Source: Mytilus californianus (taxonomy: Eukaryota). From it: a stretch of DNA of 64,000 nt. The stretch lies in the NCBI RefSeq assembly GCF_021869535.1, contig NW_026262672.1:5518001-5582000 (forward strand). The letters are read 5' to 3'. Positions 13,550-42,639 of the stretch are shown here, piece after piece. A program made the position numbers and the translations under genes. The notes below the pieces were generated by a model that saw only the letters and a list, made by a program, of their open reading frames with translations, was not told the origin of the DNA and searched no databases. How positions within the stretch are numbered: position 1 is the first letter of the stretch; each line of letters opens with the position of its first letter.

Positions 13550-15184
13550 TCCTGAATTTATTTATACATGGATTTTGTACTATGCAAAAACGTACTACAA
13601 TAAATTAACGAATTACTATTTGGTATATGATTTAAGTATAGATAGTGGGTCTCATTAGGGTCTAAGCGTGATGCGGGAGTGGCTGTTTTTCTTTGTAAGC
13701 GCGACACGTGAAAGTCAAATTATTGTGCGTGAAAACGGGAAACAAAATCGGGCGCGACGCGTGAAATTACAAAAAAAAAAACCTGGGAATCCGGGAAAAT
13801 CGTAATTTTATTAAGCGTGAAATCAAAATGTGTTGTCAAAAGAAATGAATACTTGTTTGTATGTACGGTTTACAGTCATCGACATTCCGTAATTGGTTTC
13901 TGCATTTCCAAAACTGTATCCCGAAATGTCTTTCGTACATAGTTACATAGTTACATAATCATAAAAACTAATAACAATGTTCAGTCGAGTCCAAAGATCA
14001 AGAGGTGCGTTGCAGGATTCTTCTGTAGAGAAATTTTATTTTTCATTCTGGAAGTAATATAAAATCGGATCCGTCAAACATTTCATTTTGAAAATGTTGG
14101 GTAATTTAATCTTGGTCTCAGTAAAAAATATACTCCAATCCATCCCTTTATGCACAAATTACGTACAATGAAGGGCAAAAGGCATACACAATGCAATATA
14201 CACAACAAAATATTTAAACATATTACAACATTTTTCATTGTCATACAATATCTTCCAAGTTCCCATTCTTGAACAACTAATTGTTGTATCCAAAAATATT
14301 GAAGAAATTCAAAACATGGGGACATTTTTGTCAACTTTGGCTCCCTTCGTTTTGGCCTAAAATATAGCGGCTTTTTATTGACCGTTTTTCTCTGATAAGT
14401 GAGAGATTGCCGTTTTCATGCAAAAGATTGAGGACAAGTGAAGCATACCAACAGGAGGGATCAGTATTATAATAAATTAATAAAGAAAAAACGAAAATTT
14501 AAACATTGATACTGACATTAGTTTTACCTGATAACAGTAGTCCCAGGTTTAACATCGAAAAAAGACAGAATTGCTACCTACTTAAAATAAAAACATTGAG
14601 TTAATTTTGAAGTTTTTATGTCATCCCGAATTTCTTATAGTATCATTTGTTGACTGAATTTCAACATTTCATGTAGCTGCGAATATGTGAGTCTTCGGGT
14701 CGCCCTTTATAATCGGACTTCACACAAAAAAGCGCGATTAAAAACAGCGATCTTAAGAGCTACGTATTTGCAGCTACATTGAATGCTGACATTTCTTCAT
14801 CATTAAAACAGCCACAAAAGATGCAAATATATCAAATCTGAATAAAATATAGGTCCAGGAGAGCTCACAAATATCACCGCCCCCTGATCTTATTAATTTT
14901 CTAATCTCTTGTTAGAAGATCAATTCTTGTTTAGTAAGAAACTGCTTCTCCTTGGCTCTATTTATCACGCATTACAGCTGTAGAGTGTGCCTATTAAAAG
15001 CTTATAAAATGTCAGTTTCACTGCACCAAAAATAGTCTTTCGATGCGACTAAAAGATAAAGGAAAGGCCCTCTTTCGATTACCTTTTATCCAATTTTGTT
15101 CACATTTTCAAAAAAATCAAAAGTTACAAAAGGTAGACATTTTGTATATCTTTTGATGATTCAAAAGGCAGTTGAAATGGCCCA

Positions 15185-15424
15185 CTTTTTTTTTGTCAAA
15201 AGGTGTATAAAAGGGCAACTTTTGGTATTTAAAAAGGAAGACAATAGTTATATCAAAGATCGACTTTTTTTTTGTCATAAGGTGTATAAAAGGGCAACTT
15301 TCAGTATTTAAAAAGGAAGACAATAGTTATATCAAAGATGGACTTTTTTTGTCATAAGATGTATAAAAGGGCAACTTTTAGTATTTAAAAAGGAAGACAA
15401 TAGGTATATCAAAGATGGACTTTT
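15185..15424. repeat. Left subterminal tandem array (about 78 bp x 3)
   Basis: Unit TGTCA(A/T)AAGGTGTATAAAAGGGCAACTTT...AAAGAT(C/G)GAC; unit starts at 15194, 15273 and 15350. Confidence 0.9.
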
Positions 15425-17646
15425 AGTTATTCCAAATGTATCCATATCAAAACAGAAGTTAGACTTTTGGATAAATTTGATCCTCAAAATAGTACCTTTT
15501 GTTCAAAAAAAATTAACAATTTTATACCTTTTGGAAACAAAATGTTGATAAAATATGAACAAAAGAAAAGCATGGTAGGCAAGATTTCCATATGCATATC
15601 ACCTCTTTTTTTGTTGATGAAATATGCAGAGAGAAACTATGTTTGGGTATCAAAGCAAGTTCAAATTAAGCAACTCATGACAAAAGATAGGCAAAAGGTC
15701 AACATTTAATGGCATTTTATAAAAAAAACAAGGTGAACTTTTGAGATGAAAGGCATAAAAATGTCAGTCAAATATGACCTTTTGAATATCAATTTTGACA
15801 TAAAAGAGACCTACATTTTTAGCTTTCTAGAGTGTTGTAATTCAAGAAGGTCACCAGAATGCAGCCGTTTTGTACTTCTGCATGTCTTAAGGGGCCAAGT
15901 CTTATCACAAACGTAAACCTAATATCTTAGTCAAATAATAATGTTTCCTGCTCTAATCTTCTATACCCTCATCAGTGGTTTGTCCTGTAGTAAAATGTGT
16001 GTACTGTTTTTGTTAACATGTTGTATTGTGTTCAGGGTGTGATACCCTCAATGAAGCATTTGAATTAAGTTTCTTTTGCAAAATCACCTGTCCAATGGCA
16101 AGTTTTTAATATATTGTTGCATTTGAGTAGACTCAATTGACCAGTCCATAGGGTCTTCTTGTAAATGGTGATTACTTTAACTGCCTTGTTATTTGTTCAA
16201 CATGTTCAAGTCCTTTTATAGCTGACTTTGCGGTAGGGTCTTTGCTAATCATTGAAGACAGTACAGTGACCTGTAGTTGTTTATTTCTGAGTAATCTGGT
16301 TTCTTATGAAGAGTTGTCTCATTGGCAATTATACCATACCTTCTTTTCTATATTTATATAACTTAAGAATCCATCTATAAATAGTCATTTCATATTTGCT
16401 AATTTGTTTTGTGCACTTGAATCGCACCAAAATTGCAACAAAATGAAAACATTTTTTTTAATTTGTTTTTTAATTATTATTTGATCATCCACTTCAAGTT
16501 ATCCCCCACATCTGGGGTCTCTTTATTGTTCATGTCCCCTCTGACTCTGGTCTGCAAAAGTCTTCTGCTCTTGGTGGAGCATATATCTAAATATGCTCCA
16601 TCCAATTTGGCTTTATACTCTTTGAACTTGGGCGACTGCCAAGAGGGTTGATGGGTTATAAAACCCTCTTGGCCTTCTTCATCTGAGGACATGTACATTG
16701 GCTTTAAAGCCTCTGTAATTTTGGCCTTTTTTACTGCGCTAATATCATGATTTTCAAGTGCTACTAGTCTTCTTTTTGCTTTCTGAAAAAAAAAAGATTT
16801 AACATATAGAATTGTAACCTTTAAAAGATTCATTTAGTAAATACAATTTTCTGTAAGCATTAAAAATAATGTGATGTTTGGTTACATACAGTACTGAAAC
16901 AAAAAATAGGGTTTGTATGTTGACAATTTTAATACATTAGTCATTATCATCATCAGTAGTCATTATCCCTAAAAAGACAATTTTTTTTCTCTTGTTTTTT
17001 TTTACACACTGTGTATCTGTAAGCTGTTTTTTTAATCAAGAAATTTACCCCAACTGAATACTGAATAAGTCAATCTAACAACAAAACCTGACAACTAAGT
17101 TGATATTGAAAGAACAAAGGTCACTGTACCTTATAGCTAGGTAAAAGTGGTACATGATTGAGCTTATAAAATATTATCATAACAAAATAGTCATTTTCAC
17201 ATTCATGGAACAAATATCTTTTCTTTCTCAGAGTCTTTCTGTGTATTTTAAAATGTCCTATAATTGTACAAGGAGTATTATCTATGAGTCTTTCATAAAG
17301 ATATTCATTTTAAATATTGATCATGAATTATTCACAAATAACTTTTCTGGCATTATATGATAAACACCTATTCTCATAATGAATGTTGATGCTTCCCCAA
17401 CACTTATGACTGATGAGAGAATAACAACACATTATCTGTCAATTAGTGTTATTTTCATATAAATGAATGATTTTAAAAGATTCATTTTACCTGCCTACTG
17501 TATAATTATAGTGTCGAAATTAGTGCATGTTGCCAGTAACAGAGCTAAAATGAAATGACTGCCTAATGAAAACCAAGTTACAGTTCTAAATGAATAAAAG
17601 TGTTTTCCAATAGTATATAAAGTTACGAAGCTTCTGTGACCTTTAA

Positions 17647-18120
17647 GGTAGATAAGGTGTCTTCCTCCATCTTTGATTTTGAAATACCAGAAAACAATCG
17701 GTCTAGATCTTTAATATAATGTGCAAATTTTGAGAGTAGTAGGTAATTCATGTGAAAGAATTTTCATTTCAATATAGAATATGACATGTTTTATTATATT
17801 TATGGTTGAATGTTTGATTCAATTTTTTATAACTTTGCCACATAAGGGGAGGCAATTAAATGTAAGGGCAGATAATTCAGATAAAGTTACTTTTACAATA
17901 GAATGTGTTATGAATTTACCTATTTTATTATGAAGCAAGAAAACGAGTCCTGTGACCCCATTTTTTCTTGTTCTTATCTCAAAGCATAATAATAGAGTTA
18001 TCTTCTCAAATTTTATCTCAAAATTCTATGGTGTAGTTTTTGTGTTATGGCAGAAAATTGGGTTTATTATTATTATTATTAAAAAATTCTATGGATTATA
18101 ATTTAGACACCCCATCTACC
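17647..18120. mobile_element. Kolobok-type MITE
   Basis: TTAA on both flanks (17643-17646, 18121-18124). TIR GGTAGATAAGGTGTCT vs GGTAGATGGGGTGTCT. Confidence 0.8.
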
Positions 18121-20989
18121 TTAATATATTATGGCAATCTGATTAACTTGTTTCTTCATTTTAGAGATATACTGTAATTGTACTTTTTTCCCCAGGTACT
18201 TATTTTCGCGTATTGTGTATTTCAAAAAAGTTTGCGGGTATTTCTTTTCACGATTTTTTCTCAAAAATAATAAAAAAAATTGTTTTATAGTTGTGTGTAA
18301 ATCTGAACTGTATTTAAAGTGAAATCGTAAATAGCCGTCAGGTATACTGTATTGCACACTGGGTGATTAGTGCATGCATTTCAGAATGTAAAAGATGACA
18401 GTTTGATAAGAGTTTCGGTTAAGTCCAGTATTGCAAGAGTCGCACTCGGTAAATGACAAAATGTAGTAAATTTGGTTATTTGTAAATTATCTTCTTGTGT
18501 ATTTGTTTGTGCTTGTTTTATTTTCATAATATCTAATTATAGATGAAATTTTGTTTATTATCAAATCATTACAGTAAAGCTTTCAAAAACATTGTCTGCT
18601 ACTATACACACATGTTTGTAAATCAATCAATAACAATAACAATAGAAAGTCATATGGTTCAAGGTAATCTCGAGTCATTATTGATTCTTTGACCTTTAAT
18701 TGGTTTTTACTTGTCACCTGTTGATATTAATCTAGTTTGTTTATTAATCGGATAAACAGGGTTGTAAACATGTCATGTCATCGACGTAAGGTTAAGTTTA
18801 CATGCATAGATGAACAGTAAGTTTTCAGTTAAAAAGTTGGATTTAGATTCGTGTGTATTTATTTTCGCAACAATAAACCAACCGCGAAATTTGTGAATAT
18901 AAATACATCGCGAAAATAACTACAATTACAGTATATTTAACAAGTGTTAGGCTCTGGGCTCCTTTTGTGACAGCAAATTGTAAATAATGATACATACCTC
19001 CTTTTTCCTTTCATACAGAGCTCTTTTTCTCTTTTCACCCTCATACTTGTTCTTGCTTATAGCAGATTGCTGCTGCTTCTTGGTTGAAAAATATCTTGCC
19101 ATTGCACCTACAAAAATCAGTAGCACAATCAAATCTGTGACTATATGTTTTATAATAAAAATTCATGATGTGTAAATATATATATATATATATGAATTCT
19201 TTATAGCTAATACCACTTTTTTAAAAATCTAGGGATCAAACTTGGGTCTAGAAACTATAGATTGTCAAATCTTTCTAAAAAAGTGGGTGCATTTTGTGGA
19301 GGTGTATTAACAATCAATGTGAAATGAGAATACATGTTTCCTTACAGTGTGATTGAAATCAAAGTGCATTGGGGACATATCAGAAAATGGGAGCGCTGAG
19401 AGGTTTGATTTTAATCAGGCTGGGTTCCTAGGTAACTGCATGCATTTATTTTATTATTATTAAATTATTATCTTCAAATCATACATCAATTGTAGATTTT
19501 AAATAACTAATTATAATATTTTATTTGTATCTAAAGAGAGACAACTCTTCTCTTTAGCAGAATGATCAGATTGTAAATTATATTTCCTCATTTTACAATT
19601 TAATAAAATACAAGGAAAAAGTAAAGACTACTGTAAGCTTTTGAAATTCATATCCACTTACAATTCAATACGGTGATGTCATTGTATGCTGGATTCCAGC
19701 CTTTAACAAATGTCACAATATGTGATGTCATATTTTTGTTTACTGCATCACTAACTCTGAAATGAAAAACATATACATGTACATTCTTGCTAATGTATAT
19801 ACTGAGTATACCTATTATATCAATGCATATATCAAGTTTTTGATAACTATATTGTAATCCAATTTTTGTCTTTTAAGTGTATTTAGCTAAGTTGCACATA
19901 CAGGTTGAGACCACTAATTACATTTGAATAGTAATTTTCAAAATACTAATAAATAAAACACAGCCTTGAAAAATTGACCAATCGACACTATGAACTGTAA
20001 TGCATTGTGAGTTACTACAAATTTACTAGGCATCACATAAATCATATAGAATTATATGTTAAAAACTATGAACTCATATAGTGTATTAGACTCAAATTCA
20101 ACATTGTTTTTTATTAGACAACATATAAATTGTAAAATCTATAACAATACATTGTCTTCAATTTGCATGCACAGGTTAAAAAAAATTCTCTGGTGCCTGA
20201 AACAACCAACATCAACGTGTTTTCCTTCTTGTCAACACAGTAGAACGGGTTTAGACCATTAGATTTGCTTAAGCTTTGTACACAAGCATTCATTACGTGA
20301 AAACAAAATTTTAGGTGCTGATCAAATATTGTAATAATACCTTTTTCCTTCAAAGCTCCAACAGAGACCTTTTTCTTCTCCATCCTTGTACCCTTGTTTC
20401 ACAGCATTCTACAACATCAGAGTTCATTAAAGATTTTTTTTTTGCCAATTGAATTACTAAAATAATTAAGGAATAACTGTACTGTAAATGAAGAGTTGCC
20501 ACCGTCAATTGTCGATTTGACAGTCGAAAATACAGTCTTACTGGGGAGGCGTAGTAATAACAAAAAGAAATGATATGTTAGAGCTTGAAAAAATGTATAA
20601 ATTTGACAATAAATCGAAAAAATGTATAAATATGACAATTAAAAAAATTCTGCAAAACTTCACGAATAATTTTGGTGCAAAGACGCTAAACGTGATGTCA
20701 TACAAATGAAAACTTACAATATGGAGGTTATTATGTTACCTCTATGATTCAAATTTTGATAAAATCACATTAATACAGTAAATTCAAGGTAGGTGTTGTT
20801 TAATTGTGATAATATTGTAGTTATCTAACATTTGTTGATCCGATTAATTTTAAATGACGGGTCCCTCCTTACTTACGTCTTATCAACTGTGGATTTGACG
20901 GTAACTTTTAGCCAATGAAAAAAATTGTTACATAAATAATGCATTCGAATTTTGCATTTATTTAAGTTAAAAATTATAGGGCCTTGTTT

Positions 20990-21216
20990 GAGGGTGGTAA
21001 TGGGGGTAACTTCATGACGAATAATGGTAAAAATTCTTGCCAAATGACGTTAACGGTATTTTTTGGTGCATGACAATAAAATATGCACTTTCTTTTAGAC
21101 GACAAATCACCATAAAGATATTTTGATGAATCACGGTAAAATCTTAATCAATTTGACGCTAACGGTAGCCTTAAATGGCCTTTTGACGCCTGACGTTAAA
21201 GGGCATTGCTACCCTC
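20990..21216. mobile_element. MITE with GAG..CTC termini and a 6-bp TSD
   Basis: TIR GAGGGT(G/A)G(T/C)AATG; TTGTTT on both flanks. Confidence 0.75.
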
Positions 21217-22740
21217 TTGTTTATACTGTTTGGCTCTTAAAACTATATATTTTGCCACAAGCAAGGGGTAAAATACAAGAATTCAATTTCATTTTAAGTC
21301 TCCCTTATCCTATTAGTAAGGAAAAATGGTGACATTGATTACTGTTATTCCTTTTGTTTGTTGCCATTTTTTGTACTTTTAAGTTGTATTTTTTAAGTTT
21401 ACGAAATTAAGAATGTGCAAGTTAACAAGTAGTTTCTGAGTTGAAAATGTAAGCTTTCCTTTGCTCTTTGCCATACAAAGTCATCAAGTCTAAAAAAATA
21501 TAGATATACAGACAAAAACAGAGTCAAACTCTTGAAAGCTGTGCATGTGAAAATGGATTGACATGGGGTTAAATTTAAAAAAGCCATCAAGTTATCCCCA
21601 CTGATAAAAAAAATTACCTTAACTCCTATTGGAACTACCAGATTTTCTTTGGATTTTGCAGAGCTGTTGTCATGTGCTGTCTGTGCTTTCAGTGCAAGAT
21701 TTCCTCCTGCCTCTCATATATTCTTATTAATAAATCTCTTTGACCTGTGCAGATGAAGAAAAAAGGGTTAATGAACAATTGGACTAATTCAATTTAAATA
21801 CAGAAATAAAATACACAATTTTGTATACCTTGTTTTACGAAAAAAATCTTGTCTTGCACCTTAGCCTTACCCTATATTTTTACACCCTCATATCTAATTA
21901 TATTTAATCTCTAAGTTTTTTAAATGGATCATATTAAGATTTGCCAGGATATCATTTCTGTGCTTAATTAGTGGTTTAAACTGGTCTTTGAGTGTGAATA
22001 ATTTTTATGCACCAGCCACCTGTCCTATGACATGGACCTGTTGTTCAGTGGTTGTCGTTTGTTGGTGTGATTCATATGAGTTTATCGTTTATGGTAGTTT
22101 TTTTTATATAGATTAGACCAATGGTATTTCTGTTTGAATTGTTAAAACTAGTCATTTATGGGCTCTATATAGCTTGCTGTTTGTTGTGAGCCAAGGCTCT
22201 AGATCTGTGTTAAAAGTCATACTTTAACCTGATATCATTAACTTTTTATACATTCTGACTAGGATATGGAGGTTGTCTCATTGGCACTCATACCACATCT
22301 TCTTATTTATATAATATTACACACGCATGATCTTCATTATATTTGTGAACAGCAAGCAAAAACCTATTTCTAATGAAAAATCAGTAGATTGCATCCAAGA
22401 AAAAAACTTTTGTTACATATAAATTATTAGACCAAATTTGATAAAAAAAAATCACAATTTCATACACTTTTGTTATTCTTTAAAGAAAGAAGAAATCTTT
22501 TAAAAAAGGATGTGTTTTAGTAGTACATTTTTGGTCTGGTGAGAATTAGTCTGCAGCAGCTTCTATAACAAAACTACAACTTATCAATATATTGCAAATT
22601 TTCTGAAAACTAAAGGGCAACATTCACTGTACTCCTGTGGAGATACAAATTCCCTAATATCAAAAGGTCAGTATTACTCGATTTATTTCACTTGACTGGG
22701 CAGAGTTTAACTGGTTGGCTCATAATAAACCAGTCCATCT

Positions 22741-23169
22741 CCCGGGGGAGTTACTTCCTATATTTTTAGTGGTATGAGTGTGCCGCAAAACAGGGTCACT
22801 TTTTCATGCCCTGCTTGTTAGAACAGGGTCCCTTTTTAATGTCCTGCTGGTTAGAACAAGATCGCTTTTTCATGCCCTTCTGGTGAGAACAGGGTCTTTT
22901 TTAAACAAAGTATTTGTCTAGAAAAGGGTCGCTTATTTAACTGTTTAAGATACAGTTTAGAACCCGGGTCTAGAACTGCATCTATTTTATATGGTCTAGA
23001 ACAGGGTATACATTTTTTTAGCGTGTATAGAACAGGGTATGTTTTTCAATATTTTTGTTAAGAACAGGGTATGTTTCTCAATTTTTTCTGGTTAGAACAG
23101 GGTATGATTTGGCAAGTGCTGTCGGCACAGTTATACCTGAAAGGAGAGTCAGTAACCCCCCCCCCCGGG
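22741..23169. mobile_element. MITE with CCCGGG termini and an internal TAGAACAGGG repeat
   Basis: Ends CCCGGGGG..GTTAC and GTAACCCC..CCCGGG; TCCATCT on both flanks; many internal AGAACAGGG copies. Confidence 0.8.
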
Positions 23170-23901
23170 TCCATCTATAGATAGGTTTTTAGAATAAACT
23201 CATCAATGAAGCGTCCAGTCATTCTTTTGTAAATTCCTTTGAAGACACTGATAAGTGATTAGAAATCAGTAATAATTATAACAGCAATCATCCTAATCAC
23301 ACACATCTTCAAATAGACTGTCCATATGCAAAGTAAAACGTAAGCTCTGCTCGATCAGTTGAAATAACATTGGTTATATGTGTCAGTTATAACATTGATA
23401 AATCTTACCAAGACTGTGGATATCATTGGAACTGGTATTCATGGTATTCATGGACCTTGCATTTGGTGTACTGGACTCTCTACAAGGACCACTGCTGCCA
23501 ACACCACTTGTCCTTGGTGTATTAATACTACTTGTGCTTGGTGTATTAATACTACTAGTGCTTGGAGTATTCAACATGTTCCGGACTGGTGTTTGACTTA
23601 TCTGCAAAGATATTTTCATTTCTTAGGTGTTAAGCAGTTTCCTCTCTGCAATTTTACAAATAGCCTGTATTTCAGTATGTGTACTTGCACAGTCGCCTGA
23701 AGATTTCATAATCATAGCGAAAAAATGGTGGATATAAAATATTTTTAGTAGTATTATAATAGAATAATAATTATAATACTACTAAAATTATTTTATTTCC
23801 ACCATTTTTTCACTATAATTATGAAGTCTTCAGGCAACTGTGGTACTTGCATGTCTTATGTTTATATTCTGTATGCTGAGACATGGAACACTGTAATAAA
23901 T

Positions 23902-24090
23902 GAGGGGCCTGATGGGGGGGTCTCATCACGATTCACGAGTTGATTTTTTTGTCAATCACGATTCACAGAAAATAAATTTCCATGATCACGGATCACGAAA
24001 ATATAAAAAAAATTAAATCTGTAGAAAAACGGATCACGATAACGAAAATGCGCCGATCACGAAGAACGAAAATAACCCATCAGGCCCCTC
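23902..24090. mobile_element. MITE with GAG..CTC termini and a 6-bp TSD
   Basis: Perfect 15-bp TIR GAGGGGCCTGATGGG; ATAAAT on both flanks. Confidence 0.85.
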
Positions 24091-26344
24091 ATAAATAAGT
24101 ATCAATATGCCAAAAATAAAATATAGGAATACAATCACATCCAATTCATGGTCAGATTATATGTTTTTATACAGACAAGTTTGTCTAAGAATTTACCTTT
24201 CTTATGCATGTCTTAGTTTCTAACAGTATGTCCCATGCTAAATTTAGACATTGGGGTTTTCCATCTGATTTTCGTTGATGTAAGCGATTATGAGGATTTC
24301 GTTATAAAATTGTTGCAAAGTGCTTTCTTTGAATATCACCAGTTTAATGATTTATAAACTAAAACCGGCGCTTCTCTGTCTACTAAGATTTGTTCTGTAA
24401 TAGAAAATCCAATATTGACACAGCCTATGCCCCTTAGATCATCATAACAATATATGTTCTCAGTGAGTGGATATTGAGTTATCTTGTAAAAGGCTGATGG
24501 AATTTGCGTTTAAATACATGTATACACACTTACTCTGCTTACTTGTCTTGATGTGGATGAATTCTGATGAAGGATATCAGGACTTGTTGCCAGGAATTCA
24601 TCCGTCCTTACATCATCCTCGCTTAGACAGTCTTCATGCTCGCTGTCTTGTATCACATCTCTTAAATTACGTGCTGCTCTCTGTCGAACACGACTCCTTT
24701 GAATATCAGCAAGAGGTGTTTGGTCCAAAGTTTCATCATCAGAAATATCGTTGAAAGACATGTTTGATACTAGATCTACAGTGATGACAACATTCGTGTT
24801 TGAATAGGCGCCGAAATCGCAAGAATCGTGTCTGCGGCTGTGTAAAAGAGATAAGGATGGCATGCCAAGATGCTGATTGGCTACGTTAAAGACATTTCCA
24901 TATACAGATTGGAAAATAACCAAAACTTCAACCGCATGGGATTGATACTTCAGCGCCATTATTGAACCTGAGAGTTTTTATCAGCTTAGATTTTTTTTAT
25001 AAATGGTGTAAGTATATCATTTAAAAAGCCTCTTAAACTTTACAGAAAAAAATATGGATATTGTGGTATATATATGTGCCCTTGTCCAAAGGTTCAATAG
25101 CCTGCAGCACCACCACTGAGTGCTTCAATGAGAAACTCACTAGAGAAAATCTCCTTGACACTTACAAATACCTACATGGTTTAAAATATGTATCTTGTTT
25201 TTATCTTATACCAAAAATTAAAAAAGAAATTGAAAAATATTACTTACTGTACATGTACATATGCATTTCAGCCATTTGCATACAAAAAATTGAAATTATA
25301 ATTTTAATCCTAAACAATATTGTTAAACCAGGCATGCACCTGCCAGTTAATGTTTTTTCTATATAAAAAGAGGGGGGATATGACCTTTATTGGGACTCCA
25401 GGATCGGGTGTTTTTAAGCTTTGGATTTCTGCATTGACCCTTTTGGGATCCAGGAATTCTTTTTTCGAATTTCTGGATGTCGGATGTCAGGATTTAAATT
25501 CATTTAAAATTCGGGACCTCAGGATTTCGTGTTTTTAAGTCCAGGATTTCGGGATCAGGACCCCTCCTACCCCACCCCCACACCCCCACCTCTATAAAGA
25601 AGAAGAAGAAGAACAAGATGCATGTACATTGTTAACATTATAAAAGAACATATATAACAGAGTCAACAGAGTCATAAATTTACATATTTTCACTGTTGAA
25701 CACTGTTTAAAGCAGAATTATTTTTAATTTAAAAATTATTTATGGCAGTGGTGGATCAAGAGTAATTTTCAAAAGGGGGGTAGGTGACATCTTTTTTTAT
25801 TCATATTAAAATTATTTCCTCAGCCATAAAAAAGATGTTTGCCCTAACCCTTACCTACCCTAAAAAGAGCCGCATACTCAAAATATTTTCTTGTCCTGAT
25901 GTGAAATTTTTTTTTCAATCAGATAGGCATGGAGATAAAAAAAACATTTGACACATTAATTTCTCTTTGTCAAAAAAGAAAAAAGACAATGCCTACTTTC
26001 CTGATTAAACTGATTCAACCTTCGGGTAGGATTTGGACAAACCAAATTATTTTTATAAGTGTGGCCCAGTACCATTGCTAACTTGTACATTTTGTACCAA
26101 TATAAAAAAAGAAGATGTGGTATGATTGCAATAGAGACAAGTCTCCCCACAAGATACCAAATGACACAGTAATTAACAACTATAGGTCACCATACCACCT
26201 TCAGCAATGAACAATTAATTTAAGATAATTTAAGAATTTAAGAATAAATTAACACTATTAAAAAAATGTATATCTCCAGATTCCAAAGGTCACCAAATTG
26301 GCAGGTGAGCCACAAACTCTTTCAGAGTCTAGTTTGATGACCTG

Positions 26345-27500: not shown

Positions 27501-27533
27501 TTATTTTTATTTATTAAACGTTTTTATTTCAGA

Positions 27534-29596: not shown

Positions 29597-29629
<33 letters not shown>

Positions 29630-32600: not shown

Positions 32601-35600
32601 TATCATGGTCAAGGTATTTTTATTTCATTTTTTTAGTAGGTAGTTTGTGATGAAGTGTAAGTCCAATCAACTTGAAACTTAGTACACATGTTCCCTTTGC
32701 TATGATCTTTTTAATTTTAATGCAAAATTAGAGTTTTTACCACAGTTTCACGGTCCATTAAACATAGAAAATGATTGTGCACGTGGGGCATCCGTGTGCT
32801 TGGGACACATTCTTGTTATTTTTGGCATGTCTTTGAGTCGTTTTTTAGAAATTTTAAAATAGTACAAGCAAATCTATATATGATGTTCTGGTAAAACTGT
32901 TTAACTTTCTTTATTGTAAAGAATTCAAGATTGCTATAGTTTAACAATCAAAATAGATTGATATATCAGATTCATTTTACTTCGTGATCATACTGATGAA
33001 GGACATCTGTTAACTGAAATAATTAACATTTGTTAATTAATTGTTATTTTATGGTGATCTTGTATCCTTTTAGACTGGTTATATATATTTATATGTACAA
33101 AATCATTAATGCTACTTATATTTCCTTTTAGTCTTTGAAAAGTAAAAGTAAAAAGAAGTCAAAAGAAGAAGTGAAGTCTAGAAGCAAAAGACGTCGTATG
33201 CTGAAGAAACAAAAGTAAGAATTAACATCCAACATGTTTATACTTGCCTCCTCAAAAAGTAACTGTTATATTGTGGCTTATGAAATATCACTTCATTGAA
33301 TTGATACCTAATACTAATGAATAAAAACAAAAATTAAACTTCCACACTATCCTGAATACAATGTAGTTGTTCATGATCATCTATCACTACGGCCTACTTT
33401 TCAGGGAGTTTGTTTACTGTTTTTTTGAGAAATAATAATAACATATGATTACAAATAAAAAAAAAAATTTGAAATTATCAATTTTTTTTGTCTGGAAAAA
33501 ATCCTGTGAAATGCAAGACAAAGGGAATTTGCAACTCAGTTACTATTCGTATAAAGCTTTATATTGAAGAAGATGTGGCATGAGTGCCAATGAGACAACT
33601 CTCCATCCAAGTCACGATTTATAAAAATAAACCATTATAGGCAAAAGAAGGGTCTTCACCACTAAGCTTTGACTAACACTGAACAGCTAGCTAAAAAGGT
33701 CCCCAAAATTTACTAGTGTAAAACCCATTCAAACAGGAAAAACCAAGGGTCTTATCTATATAAAAAACAAGAAAAACTAATGAACCACACCAACAAACGA
33801 CAACTATTAAACATCAGATTCCTGACTTGGGACATGTGCCAACAATAACAGGGGGTTTAAATGTTTTAATGGTACCAAACCTTTACCCTTATCTGAAACA
33901 ATAGTGTAACATCACAACATAGAAAGACACCTTATAAAATATCAATTGAAATGGCTTAAATCAAAAGACATATTAACACAAGTGAACATACACTGAACAA
34001 ATAAATTTGATCTATGATACAATGTAAACAATTAAATAAATCAAATTAGTTAGTCCGTCCAGTTTCAGGTTAAAATTTTGGTAAAAGATTTTAGTCAAGG
34101 TAGTTTTGATGAAGTTGATCATGAATTCCAATCAACTTGAACTTTGTGACTTCAACTTGAAACTCTGTATTCATGTTCACCATGATATGATCTCTCTTAA
34201 TTGAATGAAACTACCAATAGCATGAATAAAGGAAGGGAACAAGAAACTGCTGTAGGAGACTTGCTGTCCCAAGGATTTCAAGAAAAAAATGTTTCTGCCT
34301 AGTTGGTCAGCTTGTTACATGTATAAGACAAACAACCAAAACTGATTCTGACATGCCCATTTCAGTTATTGTTACTAATTATAAAGATACCAGTTTTTGT
34401 CTCGCCTTGACGGAGTCAAAAAGCGAGACATAGGTATGCGTCAACAATGTATTAGTTTGTGATAAGGTCTAGTTCATGGTGAACCACTAGTGGTAGGTCA
34501 ATGATATTTGGTATGCAGTTGTATTAGCATTGGCACATCTCATTACCTTGGAGATTATTTGGCCCCGCCGCCTCAGTCAAGGTCTATTGACTTTGAAACT
34601 TTTCATAGTTTACATGTATTAGTTTGTGATTAGGTCAATTTATGGGGAACCACTAGTGGTAGGTCAATGATATTTGGTATGCAGTTGTATAAGCATTGGC
34701 ACATCTCATTACCATGGAGATTATTTGGCCCCGCCCCCTCAGTCAAGGTCTATTGACTTTGAAACTTTTCATAGTTTACTTGTATTAGTTTGTAATTAGG
34801 TCAATTTATGGGGAACCACTAGTGGTAGGTCAATAATATTTGGTATGCAGTTGTATAAGTATTGGCATATCTCATTTCCATGGAGATTTTTTGGCTCTGC
34901 CCCCTTAGTCATGGTCTATAGACTTTGAAAATTTTGCTAAGTTAACATGTATTAGTTTGTGATTAGGTCAGTTCAAGGGGAACCATTAGTGGTAGGCCAA
35001 TGTTAATTGGTGTTCAGTTGTATAAGCATTAGCACATCTCATTTCCATGGAGAATATTTGGCCCCCGCCCCCTCAGTCATGGTCTATTTAACTTTTGAAA
35101 CTTTTGCTGAGTTTACATGTATTAGTTTGTGATTAGATCAGTTTAAGATGAACTGCTAATGTTAAGTCAATTATATTTGGTATGCAAATTTATTGGCATT
35201 TGCAAGTATCGTTTCCATGGAGATTATATAGCCCCACCCCTGATAATGGTTCATTGACTTTTAAACTTTTACATAGTTTACAAGTTAATGTTTGTGTTTA
35301 GGTTTGTTTAAAGGGAAAGACTTATAATAAGTCAATGGTATTTGGTATGCAGTTGTATTAGCATTAGCAAATCTCATTCCATGGAGATTGTTTAGCCATG
35401 TACCTTCAGTCATGGTTCATCGACTTTGAATATTTGCATAACTTACATGTTAAAGTATTGCTATTTTAATTTCAACATTTGCATTATCAAAATTACAAAA
35501 AAGCGAGACATATCTCTGTGATAACAGTTTATATTCTTTTTACTTAAGAGTTGTAAAGGACAAATGTTAACCATTCACTTTTATTTCAGATATTGGGAAC

Positions 35601-35818
35601 AAAGAGAAAAAGAAGGGGAAAATGACAATATAGATGTAGTTGAAAATGATAAAAATAGACAAATAGCAGGAACAGAAAGAAAACCTAGTGATGATAACTT
35701 TTATGTGGACATGTTTAAAGATCCATTATTTTCGAAAATGGTGACATACCAAAAGGCTAAAAGATTATCCTTAGCTTTGAAAGAAAAAGGACAGAAAAAT
35801 ATTGATATTTTAGAATAG
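27534..35818 (+). CDS. MKI67-like: Predicted 5-exon gene (232 aa): Ki-67-type FHA domain, basic NLS-like segment and short tail
   Basis: Exons 27534-27622 (MLYGEIIVIKRSGVDGAHFPLTVKNCLFG-R), 29422-29503 (GKDCDIIIKLPNVSGEHCRINVSDNKQ), 30259-30474 (VFLTNLSIDNPVLVN..LNHGDVFTIIDRSFRFD..), 33132-33214 (SLKSKSKKKSKEEVKSRSKRRRMLKKQK) and 35590-35818. All introns are GT-AG with phases 2,0,0,2; 699 nt with no internal stop. The N-terminus closely matches the Ki-67 FHA sequence as I recall it. Exons 4-5 are less certain than exons 1-3. Confidence 0.85.
27878..28299 (+). mobile_element. SINE-like retroposon copy 5, in an intron of the FHA gene
   Basis: TSD TCTTCTTTTAATCC at 27864-27877 and 28300-28313. 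Confidence 0.9.
29583..29862. mobile_element. MITE with CAG(T/G)GG(T/C)GGATCCAG TIRs
   Basis: Inverted termini, TATATC on both flanks and internal repeats of about 55 bp. An opposite-orientation relative lies at 55677-55822. Confidence 0.75.
30874..30964. repeat. Short foldback/MITE remnant
   Basis: AGAGTTCCATATGGCACCCC and its reverse complement about 50 bp apart. Confidence 0.7.
31648..31830. mobile_element. MITE with 17-bp TIRs
   Basis: TAAGGGCTATTCCAGAA ... TTCTGGAATAGCCCTTA. Confidence 0.8.
32170..32476 (+). pseudogene. GIY-YIG endonuclease, 3' fragment of a Penelope-like element
   Basis: DVIYLLQCRCGMQYVGET...RMNGH...H...RLAQE...LRTVSPTGIN matches the C-terminal GIY-YIG pattern of Penelope-like elements. 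Confidence 0.8.
34394..35536 (+). mobile_element. HINE-like element with an internal array of about 150-bp units
   Basis: TTTTTGTCTCGC/AAGCGAGACA sub-inverted repeats at both ends. The unit containing GGAACCACTAGTGGTAGGTCAAT is repeated about 6 times. Confidence 0.7.
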
Positions 35819-36173: not shown

Positions 36174-39059
36174 ATGGCAGAAAAAGCAAAGCGTCCAAGA
36201 AAATCTTGCCCTAAATGTTATACAGTTTTCTCAGACAAACATGCTCGTAGACATCTACTTGAATGTAACGTTCAATTTTGTGAAAGTGAAGTACCTCAAT
36301 CTGATAACGAAAATATACCTGTATCAAGTGTGGAAAATAACACATCAGATTATCAAAATGATATCAGTGATGATGAACATGAAATAAATTATAATTGTAT
36401 GAATAAATTCAGAAATTTATCAAATATATCTCATAATAATTTAGAAGATGAGGACATTGAAAGCTACTTTGATAGATGTGAAGATAATCTGAACGATTCA
36501 TATAGTTCTGATAATTACTCAGATGTAGAGTTTGATATTGATTGTGATGAAAGTATTGGTGTAGATCAAGAACATAATTCAGAGTCCGATATATCTCGGA
36601 TTACTTATTGGTTTTGTAAACTTTTATTATTATGGCAATGTATTTATTATATATCAGATGCAGCTATTTGTTTTCTTTTGAACATTTTAGCAACATTTTT
36701 TAAACTGTTGTCTGTGAATTCAGATGTTTGTTCTAAAGTACAAAATGTTTTCCCCAAAAACATGTACCAGTTGTCTAAACTTTTGAAGAGTAATATGTTA
36801 GATTTTAAACAATATGTTGTTTGTACCAACTGCTATTCATTGTATGAATTCGAAGATTGTTATCATATTGTTGAAGGTTCAAAAGTCTCTAAAAAGTGCT
36901 CTTTTATAGAGTTTCCTAATCATAGACTTCCTTATTTAAGAAAAAGATGTAATCAGCCTCTTTTAATGGAAATTAAAAGTGAACCTTCAAAAATATTAGC
37001 CCCTTACAAAATATACTGTTACAAATCTATTGAGTCAAGCTTAAGTTATTGTGTTAAAAGACAACATTTTGAAGACTTATGTGAACAATGGCGATTGAGA
37101 GAAACAAGAGAAGATATTATGTATGACATTTATGATGGAAAATTATGGGATGATTTTAATGGAAAAAAATATAATTTTTTTACAAAAGAGGATAATTATG
37201 GTTGCATTTTAACTGTTGATTGGTTTCAACCATACAAACATACTCATTGTTCTATAGGTGTCATGTACATAGCATTTTTTAATCTTCCACGAGATCAAAG
37301 ATTTAGAAGAGAAAATGTTTTACTAGTTGGTGTTATTCCGGATATGAAAACAGAGCCTAAGACAAACACCTTTGTTACCCCTCTTGTTCAAGAGCTAAAG
37401 AAGTCTTGGTCAGATGGTTTTCAATTGTTTTCAAATAAGTCACCTTTGATATTGAAATGCTTTAAACTTGCACTCATATGTGTTGGATGTGACATTCCTG
37501 CTAGTAGAAAGCTGTGTGGTTTCCTTGGACATGCAGCAACCTCAGGTTGCAACAAATGTAAAAAGAAATTCCCAGGAACTGTAGGTGAAAAAAATTATGG
37601 TGGTTTTGATAGATTAGAATGGCCGTCCAGAGACAACGAAAGTCATCGTCAAGAATGTGGTTTTATAAATAATTCTACTAGCAAGGGAGATAAAGAAAAC
37701 ATTGAACGTCAGTTTGGTACAAGATATTCTGCATTGCTTGAGCTTGAATACTTTGATCCAGTAAGAATGACAGCAATTGATCCAATGCATAACTTATTTT
37801 AAGGAACAGCAAAACACATGCTTTCTGTATGGAAGACAAAGAAATTATTATGTGATGACGACTTTAAAAAAATTCAGACAAAACTGGATCCATTTGAATG
37901 TCCCTCAGATGTAGGGAGACTACCTAAGAAATTTGCTTCATCTTATGGGTCATTTAATGCAGATCAGTACAAAAATTGGACCCTATTGTTTTCTATTTAT
38001 GCTTTAACTGATTTATTGCCAAAGGAACACCTTGAATGCTGGAGAAAGTTTGTGTTAGCATGTAGACGGTTGTGTTCAATGTTTATAAGTGTTGGTAATG
38101 CAAAAGTTGCAGATAGATTGCTAAATGACTTTTGTAAAAAATTTGAACAATTGTATGGGCAAGATTTTGTCACACCAAATATGCACCTTCATGGGCATTT
38201 ATATGATTGTATAATAGATTTTGGACCAGTATATTCTTCCTGGCTTTTTAGTTTTGAAAGAGAAAATGGTATATTAGGCTCTTACAAAACTAATAAAAAA
38301 AACATAGAGACTCAATTAATGAGGAGATTTTTAAAAGAGTCTTTTGCAAGGGAAAAAGAATTCCAAATGGATGAAAAATTTATGTCTTTATTCAATGATA
38401 TGTCAAATACTACAAGGGAGAGGGGTACATTAAATGATGTTTCTGTTTCTTTGAAACCAAGCGTTCTCGATATGTCATCACAATATGTACCTGTAAAAGA
38501 AGTATGTTGGGATTTATCAGATAACATTTTTGTTCCTAAAATGAAGGATGCTGTTCTGAGTGATTGTGAAATAAGACTGTTAAGCCAAATGTATTCAACA
38601 CTGTATCAGTATGATTTTATTGTTTGTCCCTCTGTCAAAGTGTGCAAAAACTTGTATTTAAATGGAACATTGCTTGGTTGCAAAATGAGCAGAAGTGTTA
38701 GATCATCCTATATTTTAGCTTATTGGTGTAATAACGAAGGGACAATTGATACTGACAATTTTGATTTATCTCCTCATCCAGGACAAATTGTACAAATGTA
38801 TAAGCATAGTATTATTGTAAATGGAGAAACAAAGACACATTTTTTAGCGAAAGTAAATTGGTACAAGAATTTACCTGCTTCTGTACAGCACTATAATGGT
38901 AAACCGATTGAAATATGGTCTTCAGAATTATTTGTTCAAGAAGGGCCTGCTTTATTTATACCAGTCCACAGAATTAAATGTAGGTTTGTTCATGCGAAAG
39001 CAAAATTTAACAGCAGAAATGTAATTATTGTTGCACCAAGAGAGCGTCATATTTTATGA
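36174..39059 (+). pseudogene. CACTA/EnSpm (Transposase_21-like) transposase, about 961 aa, with one in-frame TAA at 37800-37802
   Basis: Motifs DIYDGKLW, LTVDWFQP, NLPRDQRFRRENVLLVGVIP, GCDIPASRKLCGF, IDPMHNLF*GTAKH (normally HNLFLG), PNMHLHGHL and WLFSFERENGILG. The two ORFs are in the same frame. Confidence 0.9.
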
Positions 39060-40119: not shown

Positions 40120-40960
40120 TACCTATACCTTTTGACGTGCATAAAATGTCACAGAAAGTCGGTCCTATACATTTTGACATTCAAAAAATATCCAAGGTTG
40201 TCTATTCTATACCTTTTGACACGCACAAAATGTCAAAGATTGTCTGTCCTTTACCTTTAGACATGCACAAAATGTGAAAGGTTGTCTGTCCTATACCTTT
40301 TAACTTGCACACAATGTGAAAGGTTGTCTGTCCTATACCTTTTGACGTGCATAAAATGTCACAGAAAGTCTTTCCTATACATTTTGACATTTACAAAATG
40401 TCAAAGGTTGTCTGTCCTATACCTTTTGACATGCACAAAATGTCAAAGGTTGTCTGTTCTATACCTTTTGATATGCATAAAATGTCAAAGGTTGTCTGTT
40501 TTATACCTTTTGACATGCACAAAAGTCAAAGGTTGTCTGTCCTATACCTTTTGATATGCATAAAATGTCAAAGGTTGTCTGTCCTATACCTTTTGACATG
40601 CACAAAATGTCAAAGGTTGTCTGTTCTATACCTTTTGATATGCATAAAATGTCAAAGGTTGTCTGTTCTATACATTTTGACATGCACAAAAGTCAAAGGT
40701 TGTCTGTCCTATACCTTTTGATATGCATAAAATGTCAAAGGTTGTCTGTCCTATACCTTTTGACATGCACAAAATGTCAAATGTTGTCTGTCCTATACCT
40801 TTTGATATGCATAAAATGTCAAAGGTTGTCTATTCTATACCTTTTGACATGCACAAAATGTCAAAGGTTGTCTGTCGATTACATTTCAAGGTTCACAAAA
40901 TGTCAAAGATGGTCTTTTGTTTACATTTCAACTTACCAAAATGTCAAAGATGGTATTTTG
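40120..40960. repeat. Right subterminal tandem array (42 bp x about 20)
   Basis: Unit AAAATGTCAAAGGTTGTCTGTCCTATACCTTTTGA(C/T)ATGCA(C/T), containing an inverted pair of the TGTCAAA(A)GG motif. Confidence 0.95.
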
Positions 40961-42639
40961 TCAATAAAAAGGCGACGAAATATTATCTGTAGAGGAAGGT
41001 AGTCTTTTGATTGTATTTCATTATACACAAAAGTCAATCAAAAGATGAGTTTTCATGCAGTGTTTGATCTGTATTTTCAAGTTTCTTCCAAATTTCAACG
41101 TCCTGGTTTTTAGTATCACCTAAATTCATTTTCAGGGGTATATTTGTGTCTGGCTCTCCAACTATATTGTATTCTAGCAATGTCTGTTTTCCTAGACCAC
41201 TATCTTCTGAACTTTCTTTGATAAGCGAATAATAATAGCTTGTCCTCCTGGAAAGAGAAAAATGAACAATTAATATTGCATGTAAAAATAAACCTATCAA
41301 TCCGTTTTATTTTTATATCCACCAGAAGAGGAATGCCTTTTTTTTTCTTTTCTTTTTTTTTTGCTTGTTAATTGCAGTTTTACAGTAATTTGGACAAATT
41401 GTTTCTTTTTGTGTTTTGGGATACAAGTAGTTCGGACACATTGTTTCTTTGTCCTGTATCTACAAGGAGTTCTTGGTGATGCACATGTCACTAAATCTTT
41501 TTTCGCAATGTAAGTTGAACTATCTGCTACTATTCTAAGCTCTTCTGTAGAATACAGAAATTGTCTATATTTTGAAATTTAGAAGTGAAACTAGTACAAA
41601 TGTATGACTTTTCATAGAATTAGGGCGACACGTGTCGTTGTCATGTAAACACCAACGATGTCATAGGGTTAATTTGCAATAAACCATTTGGTTATCAATG
41701 GTCCATCAAAATAGAGAATGTTTCTGTTCTGCCCTGTTACATCTCGCTTTCACACTTCCAAAAGACTGTAGCTGAGAAAAACCCTCTAGTTTGAAGACCC
41801 ATTGATGATCTGTAACCATCTACATGTACCTTACACATATTTAAGGGTCATATCTTTGAAATTACATGTAAAATATAATATTGTTTATTAAATTAAATAT
41901 ATTTTAGTTTTAATATTCATGTACAGACAATTATCAATATATTTAACTCTGATATTTAACTGTTAATTTAAAATTATTGTGTTTACTTTGATTATTTATG
42001 ATGCAAACTACCTACCATACTTATATAATTATATTAATATTAACACTTAAAGCCTTACCACAGTAGTGGAAAGAAATTTTTGTTCATTTATGATCAATTC
42101 ATAATTAAAACCTGGGACAAAAAGTGAACAATAGTCCTAATATCTCCTTTTGTGCCATTCTGAACTCTTTCACCAACATAAATTCTTTCTAAAGATGAGT
42201 TGATGGCCATCAAAGACGGTCGGTCTTCCACTATTTGGACCTTCAAACAAATTGCTGTGTTTTATTTGACATACCTTCCGGTTAAATTAAAGGAATGAAT
42301 GCCAAGACACAACTGAACAACAAATTTATATCAACTTATAGTTTCATTCCTTTTAAAATCACACGGAAAAAAATATATACATACATTTGTTCATCTTTTC
42401 CAATTACTTTCCCCTGTCTATGCTCTTCCTTCCCTGCGCAACTCTTGCCAATTGGTAAATTTCCTTGATGCAGTTTGGAGCCCTTGTACTAAATGAGGTG
42501 CGTCGTCATTTTCAGAACTAGACGGACTTTCTGTCTGGAAAAGTATTGCTTTTTCCCAGTGGTCATCATCCTACATTCTCCTTTTCAACAGTTTCTGTTT
42601 CTTTTTTTTTTATATCATCCTGTTCTCCATGCACATCAA

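What the first reader, a model, noticed from the sequence alone, without database searches (positions are those of the whole stretch)
15019..41062. 26-kb CACTA/EnSpm transposon carrying three genes, one of them a captured cell-cycle domain
Seen in sequence: imperfect CACTGCA TIRs, a TTT duplication and matching subterminal arrays enclose a transposase, a 7-exon accessory gene and a 5-exon Ki-67-type FHA gene. Established: CACTA elements have CAC termini, 2-3 bp TSDs and subterminal repeats, and capture host gene fragments in plants. Inference: this is an animal cargo-carrying giant DNA transposon family. It looks young, with only one lesion each in the transposase and the accessory gene. I do not know of a described CACTA carrying a Ki-67 FHA gene.
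Basis: partly seen in the sequence, partly recalled or inferred. Interest (0 to 1): 0.92.

Follow-up and report, generated by a model that had tools for sequence, protein, structure and literature searches.

The report
Mussel CACTA transposon with Ki-67-type FHA gene
This is a real 26-kb cut-and-paste transposon of Mytilus mussels that carries, besides its transposase and a helper gene, a third conserved gene whose domain closely matches the phosphopeptide-binding FHA domain of the cell-proliferation protein Ki-67, which I found in no paper on transposons of this kind.

Summary
Window 15019-41062 (Mytilus californianus) is a 26,044-bp CACTA/EnSpm element. It has CACTGCA...TGCAGTG termini, a TTT target duplication, inverted subterminal motif arrays and three genes:
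- a 7-exon accessory gene (- strand, one frameshift);
- an intact 5-exon, 232-aa gene with a Ki-67-type FHA domain (+ strand);
- a 961-codon Transposase_21/DUF4218 transposase (+ strand, one in-frame stop).

Other copies settle the boundaries. An M. coruscus deletion derivative pairs the same two ends with its own duplication (ATC). A 21,971-bp M. edulis copy of a sister subfamily has all three genes apparently intact and a GTT duplication. Other copies end at the same bases with unrelated flanks. At least ten M. edulis and M. galloprovincialis contigs have FHA exons directly upstream of this transposase.

All three genes show dN/dS below 1. The FHA gene is missing from an oyster relative that keeps the accessory gene and transposase, and from a distant Mytilus CACTA family. 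It was therefore gained once in the Mytilus lineage and kept, and it is not a passive captured fragment.

Descent from the host Ki-67 gene, and the gene's function, remain inferences. I rate it a new variant of a known kind, of moderate to high interest.

The parts
15016..15018 (.). Left copy of the 3-bp target-site duplication (TTT)
   Evidence: It matches 41063-41065. Two other complete copies have their own matching triplets (ATC in L011; GTT in the M. edulis copy).
15019..15048 (+). Left terminal inverted repeat, CACTGCACCAAAAATAGTC...
   Evidence: It matches the right end 7/7 at the tip and 20/30 overall. M. coruscus copies (L011, L006) are 92-97% identical up to exactly this base and then diverge.
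15184..15424 (+). Left subterminal repeat array (79 bp x3) carrying the motif GTCAWAAGGTRTA
16483..24890 (-). Accessory gene, 7 exons: about 24890-24525, 23610-23395, 21745-21618 (frameshift near 21693), 20441-20340, 19758-19660, 19117-18998, 16785-16483 (stop 16480-16482). The likely start is the Met of MSFNDISDDE within exon 1.
   Evidence: tblastn of P0122 (423 aa, M. coruscus, 80-97% identity per exon) and of P0128 (subfamily B). The exons are conserved with subfamily B at L005 603-2951. dN/dS is 0.23 against the M. coruscus copy. No Pfam family matches. The AlphaFold model (pLDDT 89) has no PDB fold match.
27534..35818 (+). FHA gene, 5 exons: 27534-27622, 29422-29503, 30259-30474, 33132-33214, 35590-35818. 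The 232-aa product has a Ki-67-type FHA domain (about residues 1-97), a Lys/Arg-rich stretch, and a conserved C-terminal motif NFYxDxxKDPLFSxM.
   Evidence: All splice sites are GT-AG and the ORF is intact. Pfam FHA. Among PDB chains only Ki-67 FHA matches strongly. It is 40% identical over its full length to the subfamily-B protein P0121. dN/dS is 0.42 (0.23-0.79) against the M. galloprovincialis copy.
36174..39059 (+). Transposase gene, a single exon of 961 codons with an in-frame TAA at 37800-37802
   Evidence: Pfam Transposase_21 and DUF4218. Collinear with 948-968-aa relatives. 71 of 73 near-invariant residues are kept, including D349, D440 and E695. dN/dS is 0.35.
40122..40961 (+). Right subterminal repeat array (42 bp x19 plus degenerate copies) carrying the same motif on the opposite strand
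   Evidence: inverted repeat I11.
41033..41062 (-). Right terminal inverted repeat (...TTTTCATGCAGTG)
   Evidence: The same 13 bases end the element in L003, L004, L005, L011 and the M. edulis copy, each followed by a different flank.
41063..41065 (.). Right copy of the target-site duplication (TTT)
26349..27501 (.). Nested block specific to this copy (160-bp tandem array), absent from the M. coruscus and M. galloprovincialis copies. Similar window-specific blocks lie at 17498-18333, 22740-23169, 27665-29196, 30869-33040 and 34398-35527.
   Evidence: Gaps in the collinear blastn maps against L003 and L006; tandem repeats.

Best explanation
What it is: a copy of an autonomous-type CACTA/EnSpm (CMC superfamily) DNA transposon family that is specific to Mytilus mussels. 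This copy is now disabled.

How it moves: the family moves by DDE-transposase cut-and-paste and makes 3-bp target duplications.

Gene layout: three genes lie in a fixed order, with the accessory gene pointing outward to the left and the FHA gene followed by the transposase pointing to the right.
- The accessory gene is the older partner of the transposase, because it also sits beside a related transposase in an oyster. By analogy with maize TnpA, I infer that its product binds the 13-bp subterminal motifs and brings the ends together. It is not detectably homologous to TnpA.
- The FHA gene was added once in the Mytilus lineage, before subfamilies A and B split. The most likely source is the FHA-encoding 5' exons of a host Ki-67-like gene. 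It has since been kept as a working element gene.

Inferred FHA function: the product keeps the residues FHA domains use to bind phosphothreonine and has a basic, NLS-like stretch. I infer that it docks on a phosphorylated host nuclear protein. That would either couple transposition to dividing cells and mitotic chromatin or recruit repair factors to the excision break.

Shown versus inferred: the structure, family membership, mobility, gene conservation and the taxa where I found the FHA gene are shown. The binding partners and the role in transposition are inferred.
For: Boundaries and mobility:
- Three complete copies each have matching 3-bp duplications: TTT in the window, ATC in L011 and GTT in the M. 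edulis copy.
- Identical terminal bases are followed by unrelated flanks in L003, L004, L005 and L006.
- L004 and L005 are 99.56% identical over 8.1 kb at different sites.

Transposase: Transposase_21 and DUF4218. The window keeps the conserved acidic residues D349, D440 and E695.

Three-gene order: conserved in subfamily A (window; L003; L006) and subfamily B (L005; the M. edulis copy).

Copy number: 19 members in the FHA+transposase protein cluster, spread over many contigs.

Selection: dN/dS is 0.42 for FHA, 0.35 for the transposase and 0.23 for the accessory gene, and every bootstrap interval lies below 1.

FHA identity: Ki-67 is the only strong PDB match. The alignments cover Ki-67 residues about 7-100 and keep GR, SxxH and the NP asparagine.

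Timing of the gain:
- Oyster locus L009 has the transposase and accessory gene in the same divergent layout, with no FHA between them.
- The distant M. edulis CACTA locus L012 and the Saccostrea locus L010 have neither FHA nor accessory gene within 10 kb.
Against: - No host Ki-67 gene from a mussel could be fetched, so the donor of the FHA exons is not demonstrated.
- There is no expression or binding data. The accessory protein has no Pfam match and no PDB fold match, so its TnpA-like role rests on position and analogy only.
- The M. coruscus deletion copy L011 lacks the accessory gene and FHA exons 1-3, yet keeps an intact transposase and a clean duplication. Neither gene is therefore needed in cis, and whether either is needed at all is untested.
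- dN/dS between transposon copies mixes the active phase with neutral decay after insertion.
Confidence: 0.85

Rival explanations
1. The FHA gene is passive, non-functional cargo. On this view it is a host gene fragment picked up by the element, as in plant Pack-type captures, and is carried along without serving the element.
For: CACTA elements do capture host fragments in plants (reviewed in PMC13317346, listed). The deletion copy L011 has lost FHA exons 1-3 and still has an intact transposase and a clean duplication. The FHA protein diverges faster between subfamilies (40% identity) than the transposase does (69%).
Against: - The ORF is intact and all five exons keep GT-AG sites in the window. 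The exons match P0121 at 85-100% in the M. edulis copy.
- The same gene sits in the same place in two subfamilies whose transposases are only 69% identical.
- dN/dS is 0.42 with the upper bound at 0.79.
- The phosphothreonine-binding residues are kept.
- Both subfamilies share a non-FHA C-terminal motif.
Confidence: 0.08
2. The FHA exons are 5' exons of the transposase gene, so the element makes an FHA-transposase fusion protein. At the least, both proteins would come from one transcript by alternative splicing, as TnpA and TnpD do in maize En/Spm.
For: - At least ten automated gene models in M. edulis and M. galloprovincialis fuse FHA and Transposase_21 into proteins of 1127-1219 aa.
- The two genes lie on the same strand, 355 bp apart.
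- There is no AATAAA or ATTAAA between the FHA stop and the transposase ATG, while both signals occur after the other two stops.
- A GT follows the conserved ...DPLFSxM codon used as donor in the fused models.
Against: - The last FHA exon ends in a stop codon in both the window and P0121.
- RefSeq models keep the proteins apart: P0121 and P0212 (214 aa, FHA only) and P0198 (955 aa, transposase only).
- Full-length relatives from many sources start at the same Met as 36174 and carry no FHA.
- In the window only 12 codons are open upstream of the transposase ATG, and none is preceded by AG. The in-frame junction used in the subfamily-B models therefore cannot form here.
Confidence: 0.1
3. The FHA gene is the host's own Ki-67-like gene, or the 26-kb span is an assembly chimera. 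On this view the CACTG ends belong to unrelated elements.
For: Before other copies were examined, the left 11 kb had no counterpart in the first three loci fetched.
Against: - The same left and right ends pair in L011 with an ATC duplication.
- The accessory exons, FHA gene and transposase are collinear in L005 and in the M. edulis copy.
- The FHA gene is multicopy on many contigs and encodes only 232 aa.
- A second M. californianus assembly has the same structure from 26682 to 47877.
Confidence: 0.01

Closest known systems
Maize En/Spm and other plant CACTA elements
   Same: CACT(A/G) termini, 3-bp target duplication and several hundred bp of subterminal direct and inverted repeats. They also have a Tnp2/Transposase_21-type DDE transposase plus a second gene, and they produce internal-deletion derivatives like dSpm (defining features as given in PMC8978399; tested).
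   Different: This is an animal host. The second gene has no detectable similarity to the plant TnpA family or to any Pfam family. A third conserved gene encodes an FHA domain. The accessory gene is transcribed divergently, not from the same transcript.
Two-gene CACTA relative in the oyster Crassostrea angulata (L009, JANFPH010000124.1)
   Same: The transposase is 46% identical. A homologous accessory gene sits in the same divergent orientation.
   Different: There is no FHA gene in the 5.6 kb between the two genes (tblastn E<1). It shows the state of the family before the FHA gain.
Enlarged En/Spm families of the red alga Chondrus crispus (16-20 kb, 4-5 ORFs; Kojima et al. 2013, as cited in PMC6431247)
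   Same: These are CACTA elements well above the usual size, with more than the usual one or two ORFs.
   Different: A different kingdom. I could not check what the extra ORFs encode, and the review does not mention an FHA domain.
Gene-fragment capture by plant CACTA and Pack-MULE elements
   Same: Host-derived coding sequence lies inside a TIR transposon.
   Different: Those captures are usually fragments in non-autonomous elements and decay neutrally. Here a complete spliced gene sits in autonomous-type copies and is under purifying selection.
FHA domain of human Ki-67 (PDB 1R21, 2AFF)
   Same: It is the only strong PDB match (E 5e-15). About half the residues are identical across residues about 7-100, including the N-terminal strand IKRSGVDGxHFPL and HGDVxTIxDRSFR.
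   Different: The element protein has 232 residues and lacks the PP1-binding region, the Ki-67 repeats and the LR chromatin-binding domain. It is multicopy and lies between transposon ends.

Membership tests
CACTA / EnSpm (CMC superfamily) DNA transposons | Terminal inverted repeats beginning 5'-CACT(A/G) | tested here: met
   CACTGCA at both ends of the window copy and of every other copy examined.
CACTA / EnSpm (CMC superfamily) DNA transposons | 3-bp target-site duplication | tested here: met
   TTT (window), ATC (L011) and GTT (M. edulis copy). The chance of three random matches is about (1/64)^3.
CACTA / EnSpm (CMC superfamily) DNA transposons | Subterminal arrays of short repeats in opposite orientation at the two ends | tested here: met
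   20 motif hits confined to the two subterminal regions, on opposite strands, against 0.5 expected.
CACTA / EnSpm (CMC superfamily) DNA transposons | Tnp2-type transposase (Pfam Transposase_21, usually with DUF4218) | tested here: met
   Transposase_21 at E 1e-11 (window) and 2e-12 (P0198). DUF4218 scores below the Pfam cut-off but falls in the expected place.
CACTA / EnSpm (CMC superfamily) DNA transposons | Acidic DDD/E catalytic triad | tested here: inconclusive
   D349, D440 and E695 are 93-100% conserved among 26 relatives and are present in the window. They were picked by conservation and motif context, not by alignment to a transposase with mapped catalytic residues.
CACTA / EnSpm (CMC superfamily) DNA transposons | Second ORF homologous to plant TnpA (Pfam Transposase_24) | tested here: not met
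   P0122, P0128, P0132 and P0141 match no relevant Pfam family at E<=0.1. This is a feature of the plant elements, not of the superfamily.
CACTA / EnSpm (CMC superfamily) DNA transposons | Mobility: copies at different loci with unrelated flanks | tested here: met
   Seven ends with different flanks in four species, and two 99.6%-identical copies at different sites. An empty site for the window insertion itself could not be searched.
Ki-67 (MKI67) orthologues | N-terminal FHA domain of the Ki-67 type | tested here: met
   Ki-67 FHA at E 2e-10 to 5e-15. The next PDB FHA domain scores E 0.08.
Ki-67 (MKI67) orthologues | Large protein with a PP1-binding motif, Ki-67 repeats and a C-terminal LR domain (from my own knowledge of Ki-67) | tested here: not met
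   The product has 232 aa. After the FHA domain come only a basic stretch and a short conserved motif. It has a Ki-67-type domain but is not a Ki-67 orthologue.
Ki-67 (MKI67) orthologues | Single-copy host locus | tested here: not met
   It is multicopy, always between CACTA ends and next to the transposase.
Pack-type non-autonomous elements with captured gene fragments | No transposase of their own; the captured sequence is fragmentary and evolves neutrally | tested here: not met
   The transposase is present. The FHA gene is complete and dN/dS is 0.42 (0.23-0.79).

The most novel reading that the evidence does not exclude
The element-encoded FHA protein mimics the Ki-67 FHA domain. On this reading it binds the mussel counterpart of a mitotically phosphorylated Ki-67 partner (NIFK- or KIF15-like). 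The transposon would thereby sense the host's proliferative state and place or time its transposition on mitotic chromosomes of dividing germline or haemocyte cells. That would be a DNA transposon that has taken over a cell-cycle reader module for its own regulation.
Probability: 0.2. Interest if true: 0.85.

Novelty: new variant of a known kind. Interest (0 to 1): 0.66.

Why it matters
CACTA elements are classically described with one or two genes. Host sequences captured by DNA transposons are nearly always decaying fragments. Here a complete, spliced gene that reads phosphorylated proteins has been kept under selection inside an animal CACTA family. That holds across at least four mussel species and two subfamilies, and the M. 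edulis copy has all three genes open.

This gives a concrete system for asking what a transposon gains from a phosphothreonine-binding module borrowed from the cell-proliferation machinery. It also shows how an accessory gene is added to a cut-and-paste element, because the oyster relative preserves the two-gene state.

Practically, the family explains a set of misleading 'FHA domain-containing protein' gene models of about 1,200 aa in Mytilus annotations. These are read-through fusions of two transposon genes.

Tried and rejected
- Two regular-expression scans for FHA signatures found nothing, because introns split the motifs. A Pfam screen of 118 stop-to-stop ORFs and a reading of the ORFs then located the exons.
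- The first three related loci (L001, L003, L004) showed no left end and no accessory gene. I therefore briefly considered a left boundary near 26067. I rejected it once L005, L006, L007 and L011 were read.
- Length-limited protein searches with the FHA part returned only Mytilus proteins. They could not reach a long host Ki-67 protein, so the donor gene stays untested.
- The accessory protein gave no Pfam family. It folded confidently (pLDDT 89) but had no PDB fold neighbour (best E 0.9).
- The hit to AHNAK2 looks like a composition artefact of a repetitive 6,182-aa protein (name).
- Both flanks are unique among all held sequences, so there is no paralogous empty site.
- The GIY-YIG look of ORF 32129-32473 was not confirmed by Pfam.
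- Five literature searches for an FHA gene in CACTA/EnSpm elements, or for CACTA elements in mussels and other bivalves, found nothing relevant. Repbase could not be consulted.
- Locus L004 contains runs of N; they were left as they are.
Full report
**What is at the coordinates**

The element starts with CACTGCACC at 15019 and ends with CATGCAGTG at 41062. TTT lies on both sides. It is 26,044 bp long. The two ends match 7/7 at the tip and 20/30 over the first 30 bases.

Just inside each end there are tandem arrays: 79 bp x3 at 15184-15424, and 42 bp x19 (plus degenerate copies) at 40122-40961. The arrays share a 13-bp motif, GTCAWAAGGTRTA. With one mismatch allowed it occurs 20 times in the 64-kb window. 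Three hits are on the + strand at 15195-15363 and seventeen are on the - strand at 40124-40848. There are none elsewhere, against 0.5 expected from shuffles. The window has no N.

**The three genes**

*Transposase.* The gene runs from 36174 to 39056. It has Pfam Transposase_21 (E 1e-11) and a weak DUF4218 hit.
- It aligns end to end, in one frame, with 948-968-aa relatives that start at the same Met.
- Its only lesion is an in-frame TAA at 37800-37802, where other copies have a sense codon.
- It keeps 71 of 73 residues that are at least 97% conserved in 26 full-length relatives. It also has D349, D440 (conserved in 25 of those 26) and E695, the likely acidic triad.

*FHA gene.* It has five exons with GT-AG borders: 27534-27622, 29422-29503, 30259-30474, 33132-33214 and 35590-35818. 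They give an uninterrupted 232-aa protein.
- Exons 1-3 encode an FHA domain. Among all PDB chains it matches strongly only the FHA domain of human Ki-67. The E-values are 3e-6 for exon 1, 2e-10 for exon 3, and 5e-15 for the M. edulis homologue across exons 2-3. The next FHA domain scores E 0.08.
- The alignments keep the GR, SxxH and NP residues.
- Exon 4 is Lys/Arg-rich. Exon 5 carries the motif NFYxDxxKDPLFSxM, which both subfamilies share.

*Accessory gene.* It lies on the - strand. It maps in seven exons between 24890 and 16483, using the M. coruscus protein P0122 as guide. It has one frameshift, near 21693.

**Species and independent assembly**

The transposase is 99% identical to M. californianus LOC127732339. 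The locus from assembly GCA_021869535.1 matches window 26682-47877 at 99.2%, including the right flank. The structure is therefore not an artefact of one assembly.

**Other copies fix the boundaries**

Two subfamilies exist. Subfamily A holds the window copy. Subfamily B transposases are 69% identical to the window's.

Subfamily A:
- L011 (M. coruscus) is an 8,603-bp internal-deletion copy. Its left end is 95-97% identical to window 15019-16481, and it then jumps to window 32832-41062. It is flanked by ATC on both sides and has an intact 948-aa transposase. The two window termini therefore belong to one element.
- L006 (M. coruscus) holds another left end that stops exactly at the base equivalent to 15019. 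It also holds a partial copy, 88-94% identical to window 15112-27616, that includes the accessory gene.
- L003 (M. galloprovincialis) is collinear with window 26067-41066 and ends ...CATGCAGTG|ATT.

Subfamily B:
- Two overlapping loci from one M. edulis contig (L007, L008) give a 21,971-bp copy flanked by GTT on both sides. It has the accessory gene (P0128), a five-exon FHA gene and an open 955-aa transposase ORF.
- L004 and L005 (M. galloprovincialis) are 99.56% identical over 8.1 kb but have different right flanks, which points to recent transposition.

The protein cluster around P0197 has 19 members. Ten of them are named 'FHA domain-containing protein' and lie on eight different M. edulis and M. 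galloprovincialis contigs.

**Is the FHA gene part of the element or a passenger?**

- It sits in the same place, between the accessory gene and the transposase and on the transposase strand, in both subfamilies.
- Between the window and the M. galloprovincialis copy, dN/dS is 0.42 (bootstrap 0.23-0.79). The values are 0.35 for the transposase and 0.23 for the accessory gene.
- The A and B proteins are 40% identical over their whole length, including the non-FHA tail.
- The deletion copy L011 lacks FHA exons 1-3, so the gene is not needed in cis.

I conclude that it is a maintained element gene, acting in trans if it acts at all.

**When was it gained?**

- The oyster locus L009 (Crassostrea angulata) has a 46%-identical transposase and a homologous accessory gene in the same divergent layout. 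It has no FHA sequence between them.
- A Saccostrea locus and a distant M. edulis CACTA family have neither extra gene within 10 kb.
- Oyster accessory-gene relatives occur on 2-3-kb Logan contigs with complete 380-aa ORFs. For a multi-exon gene this suggests spliced transcripts, which is an inference.

The simplest history is a two-gene bivalve CACTA lineage that gained the FHA gene once in the Mytilus lineage, before subfamilies A and B split.

**Separate genes or a fusion?**

Many automated models fuse FHA and transposase. Several points argue against a fusion:
- the last FHA exon ends in a stop codon;
- RefSeq has separate 214-aa and 955-aa models;
- relatives without FHA start at the same Met;
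- in the window no in-frame acceptor exists upstream of the transposase ATG.

No canonical poly(A) signal lies between the two genes. A shared transcription unit therefore remains possible.

**Function (inference)**

The transposase cuts and pastes. By analogy with TnpA, the accessory protein is the candidate binder of the subterminal motifs. It has no Pfam match. A confident model (pLDDT 89) has no PDB neighbour.

The FHA protein most likely binds a phosphothreonine-bearing nuclear host protein. The attractive version is mimicry of Ki-67's FHA to couple transposition to dividing cells. Recruitment of break-repair factors is the alternative. Neither was tested.

**Comparison with what is known**

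All superfamily-defining CACTA features tested were met, apart from the catalytic triad, which is inconclusive. The features are as listed in PMC8978399. Enlarged CACTA elements with 4-5 ORFs are on record in a red alga (PMC6431247). Gene-fragment capture by plant CACTAs is well known. I found no report of an FHA gene in a CACTA element, and no description of this mussel family. Repbase could not be checked.

**Verdict**

It is a new variant of a known kind. About 7 kb of the 26 kb is nested repeat material specific to this copy. This copy is dead in two of its three genes.

Noticed in passing
window 1574-5467 (+): ORFs of a BEL/Pao LTR retrotransposon (Peptidase_A17 E 2e-44, integrase core, DUF5641).
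   Followed up: partly
window 50603-52703 (-): PIF/Harbinger-type transposase split over two ORFs (DDE_Tnp_4, HTH_Tnp_4), with a SWIM zinc finger at its C-terminus.
   Followed up: partly
window 59072-59710 and 61068-62270 (+): Exons with Roc GTPase and COR-A domains. This is probably a ROCO-family host gene and is the only clear host gene seen in the window.
   Followed up: partly
window 44606-47497 and 57605-58096: Long degenerate (ACATT)n-type satellite arrays, with a marked drop in GC content and GC skew.
   Followed up: no
window 7025-7444, 9115-9433, 9844-10265, 13129-13551, 27878-28299: A repeat of about 420 bp is present five times in the window, once nested inside the element. It also occurs in M. 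edulis and M. coruscus loci. It is probably a common mussel MITE or SINE.
   Followed up: no
window 30869-33040, ORF 32129-32473 (+): A block specific to this copy lies inside an FHA-gene intron. Its ORF looks like a GIY-YIG nuclease motif (Penelope-like element?) by eye, but Pfam did not confirm this.
   Followed up: partly
window 41066-41306 (-) joined to 15005-15018: With the element removed in silico, an 85-aa ORF on the - strand runs from the right flank and stops 13 nt into the left flank. The insertion may therefore have hit the end of a host exon. There is no Pfam match.
   Followed up: partly
L011 7541-7565 (M. coruscus): The internal deletion joins window positions 16481 and 32832 through about 25 bp that align to both sides. 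This is the kind of short-homology junction expected from abortive gap repair, as in dSpm-type derivatives.
   Followed up: no
L003 8025-15107 (M. galloprovincialis): This subfamily-A copy has a partial tandem duplication of the transposase region. Both transposase copies carry a 224-bp deletion corresponding to window 36658-36882.
   Followed up: no
Mytilus protein annotations (P0197 cluster): Two 292-aa proteins named as LDL-receptor-related fall in the same 90% cluster as the FHA+transposase models. This may be a clustering or annotation oddity, or a host gene model that has absorbed element sequence.
   Followed up: no
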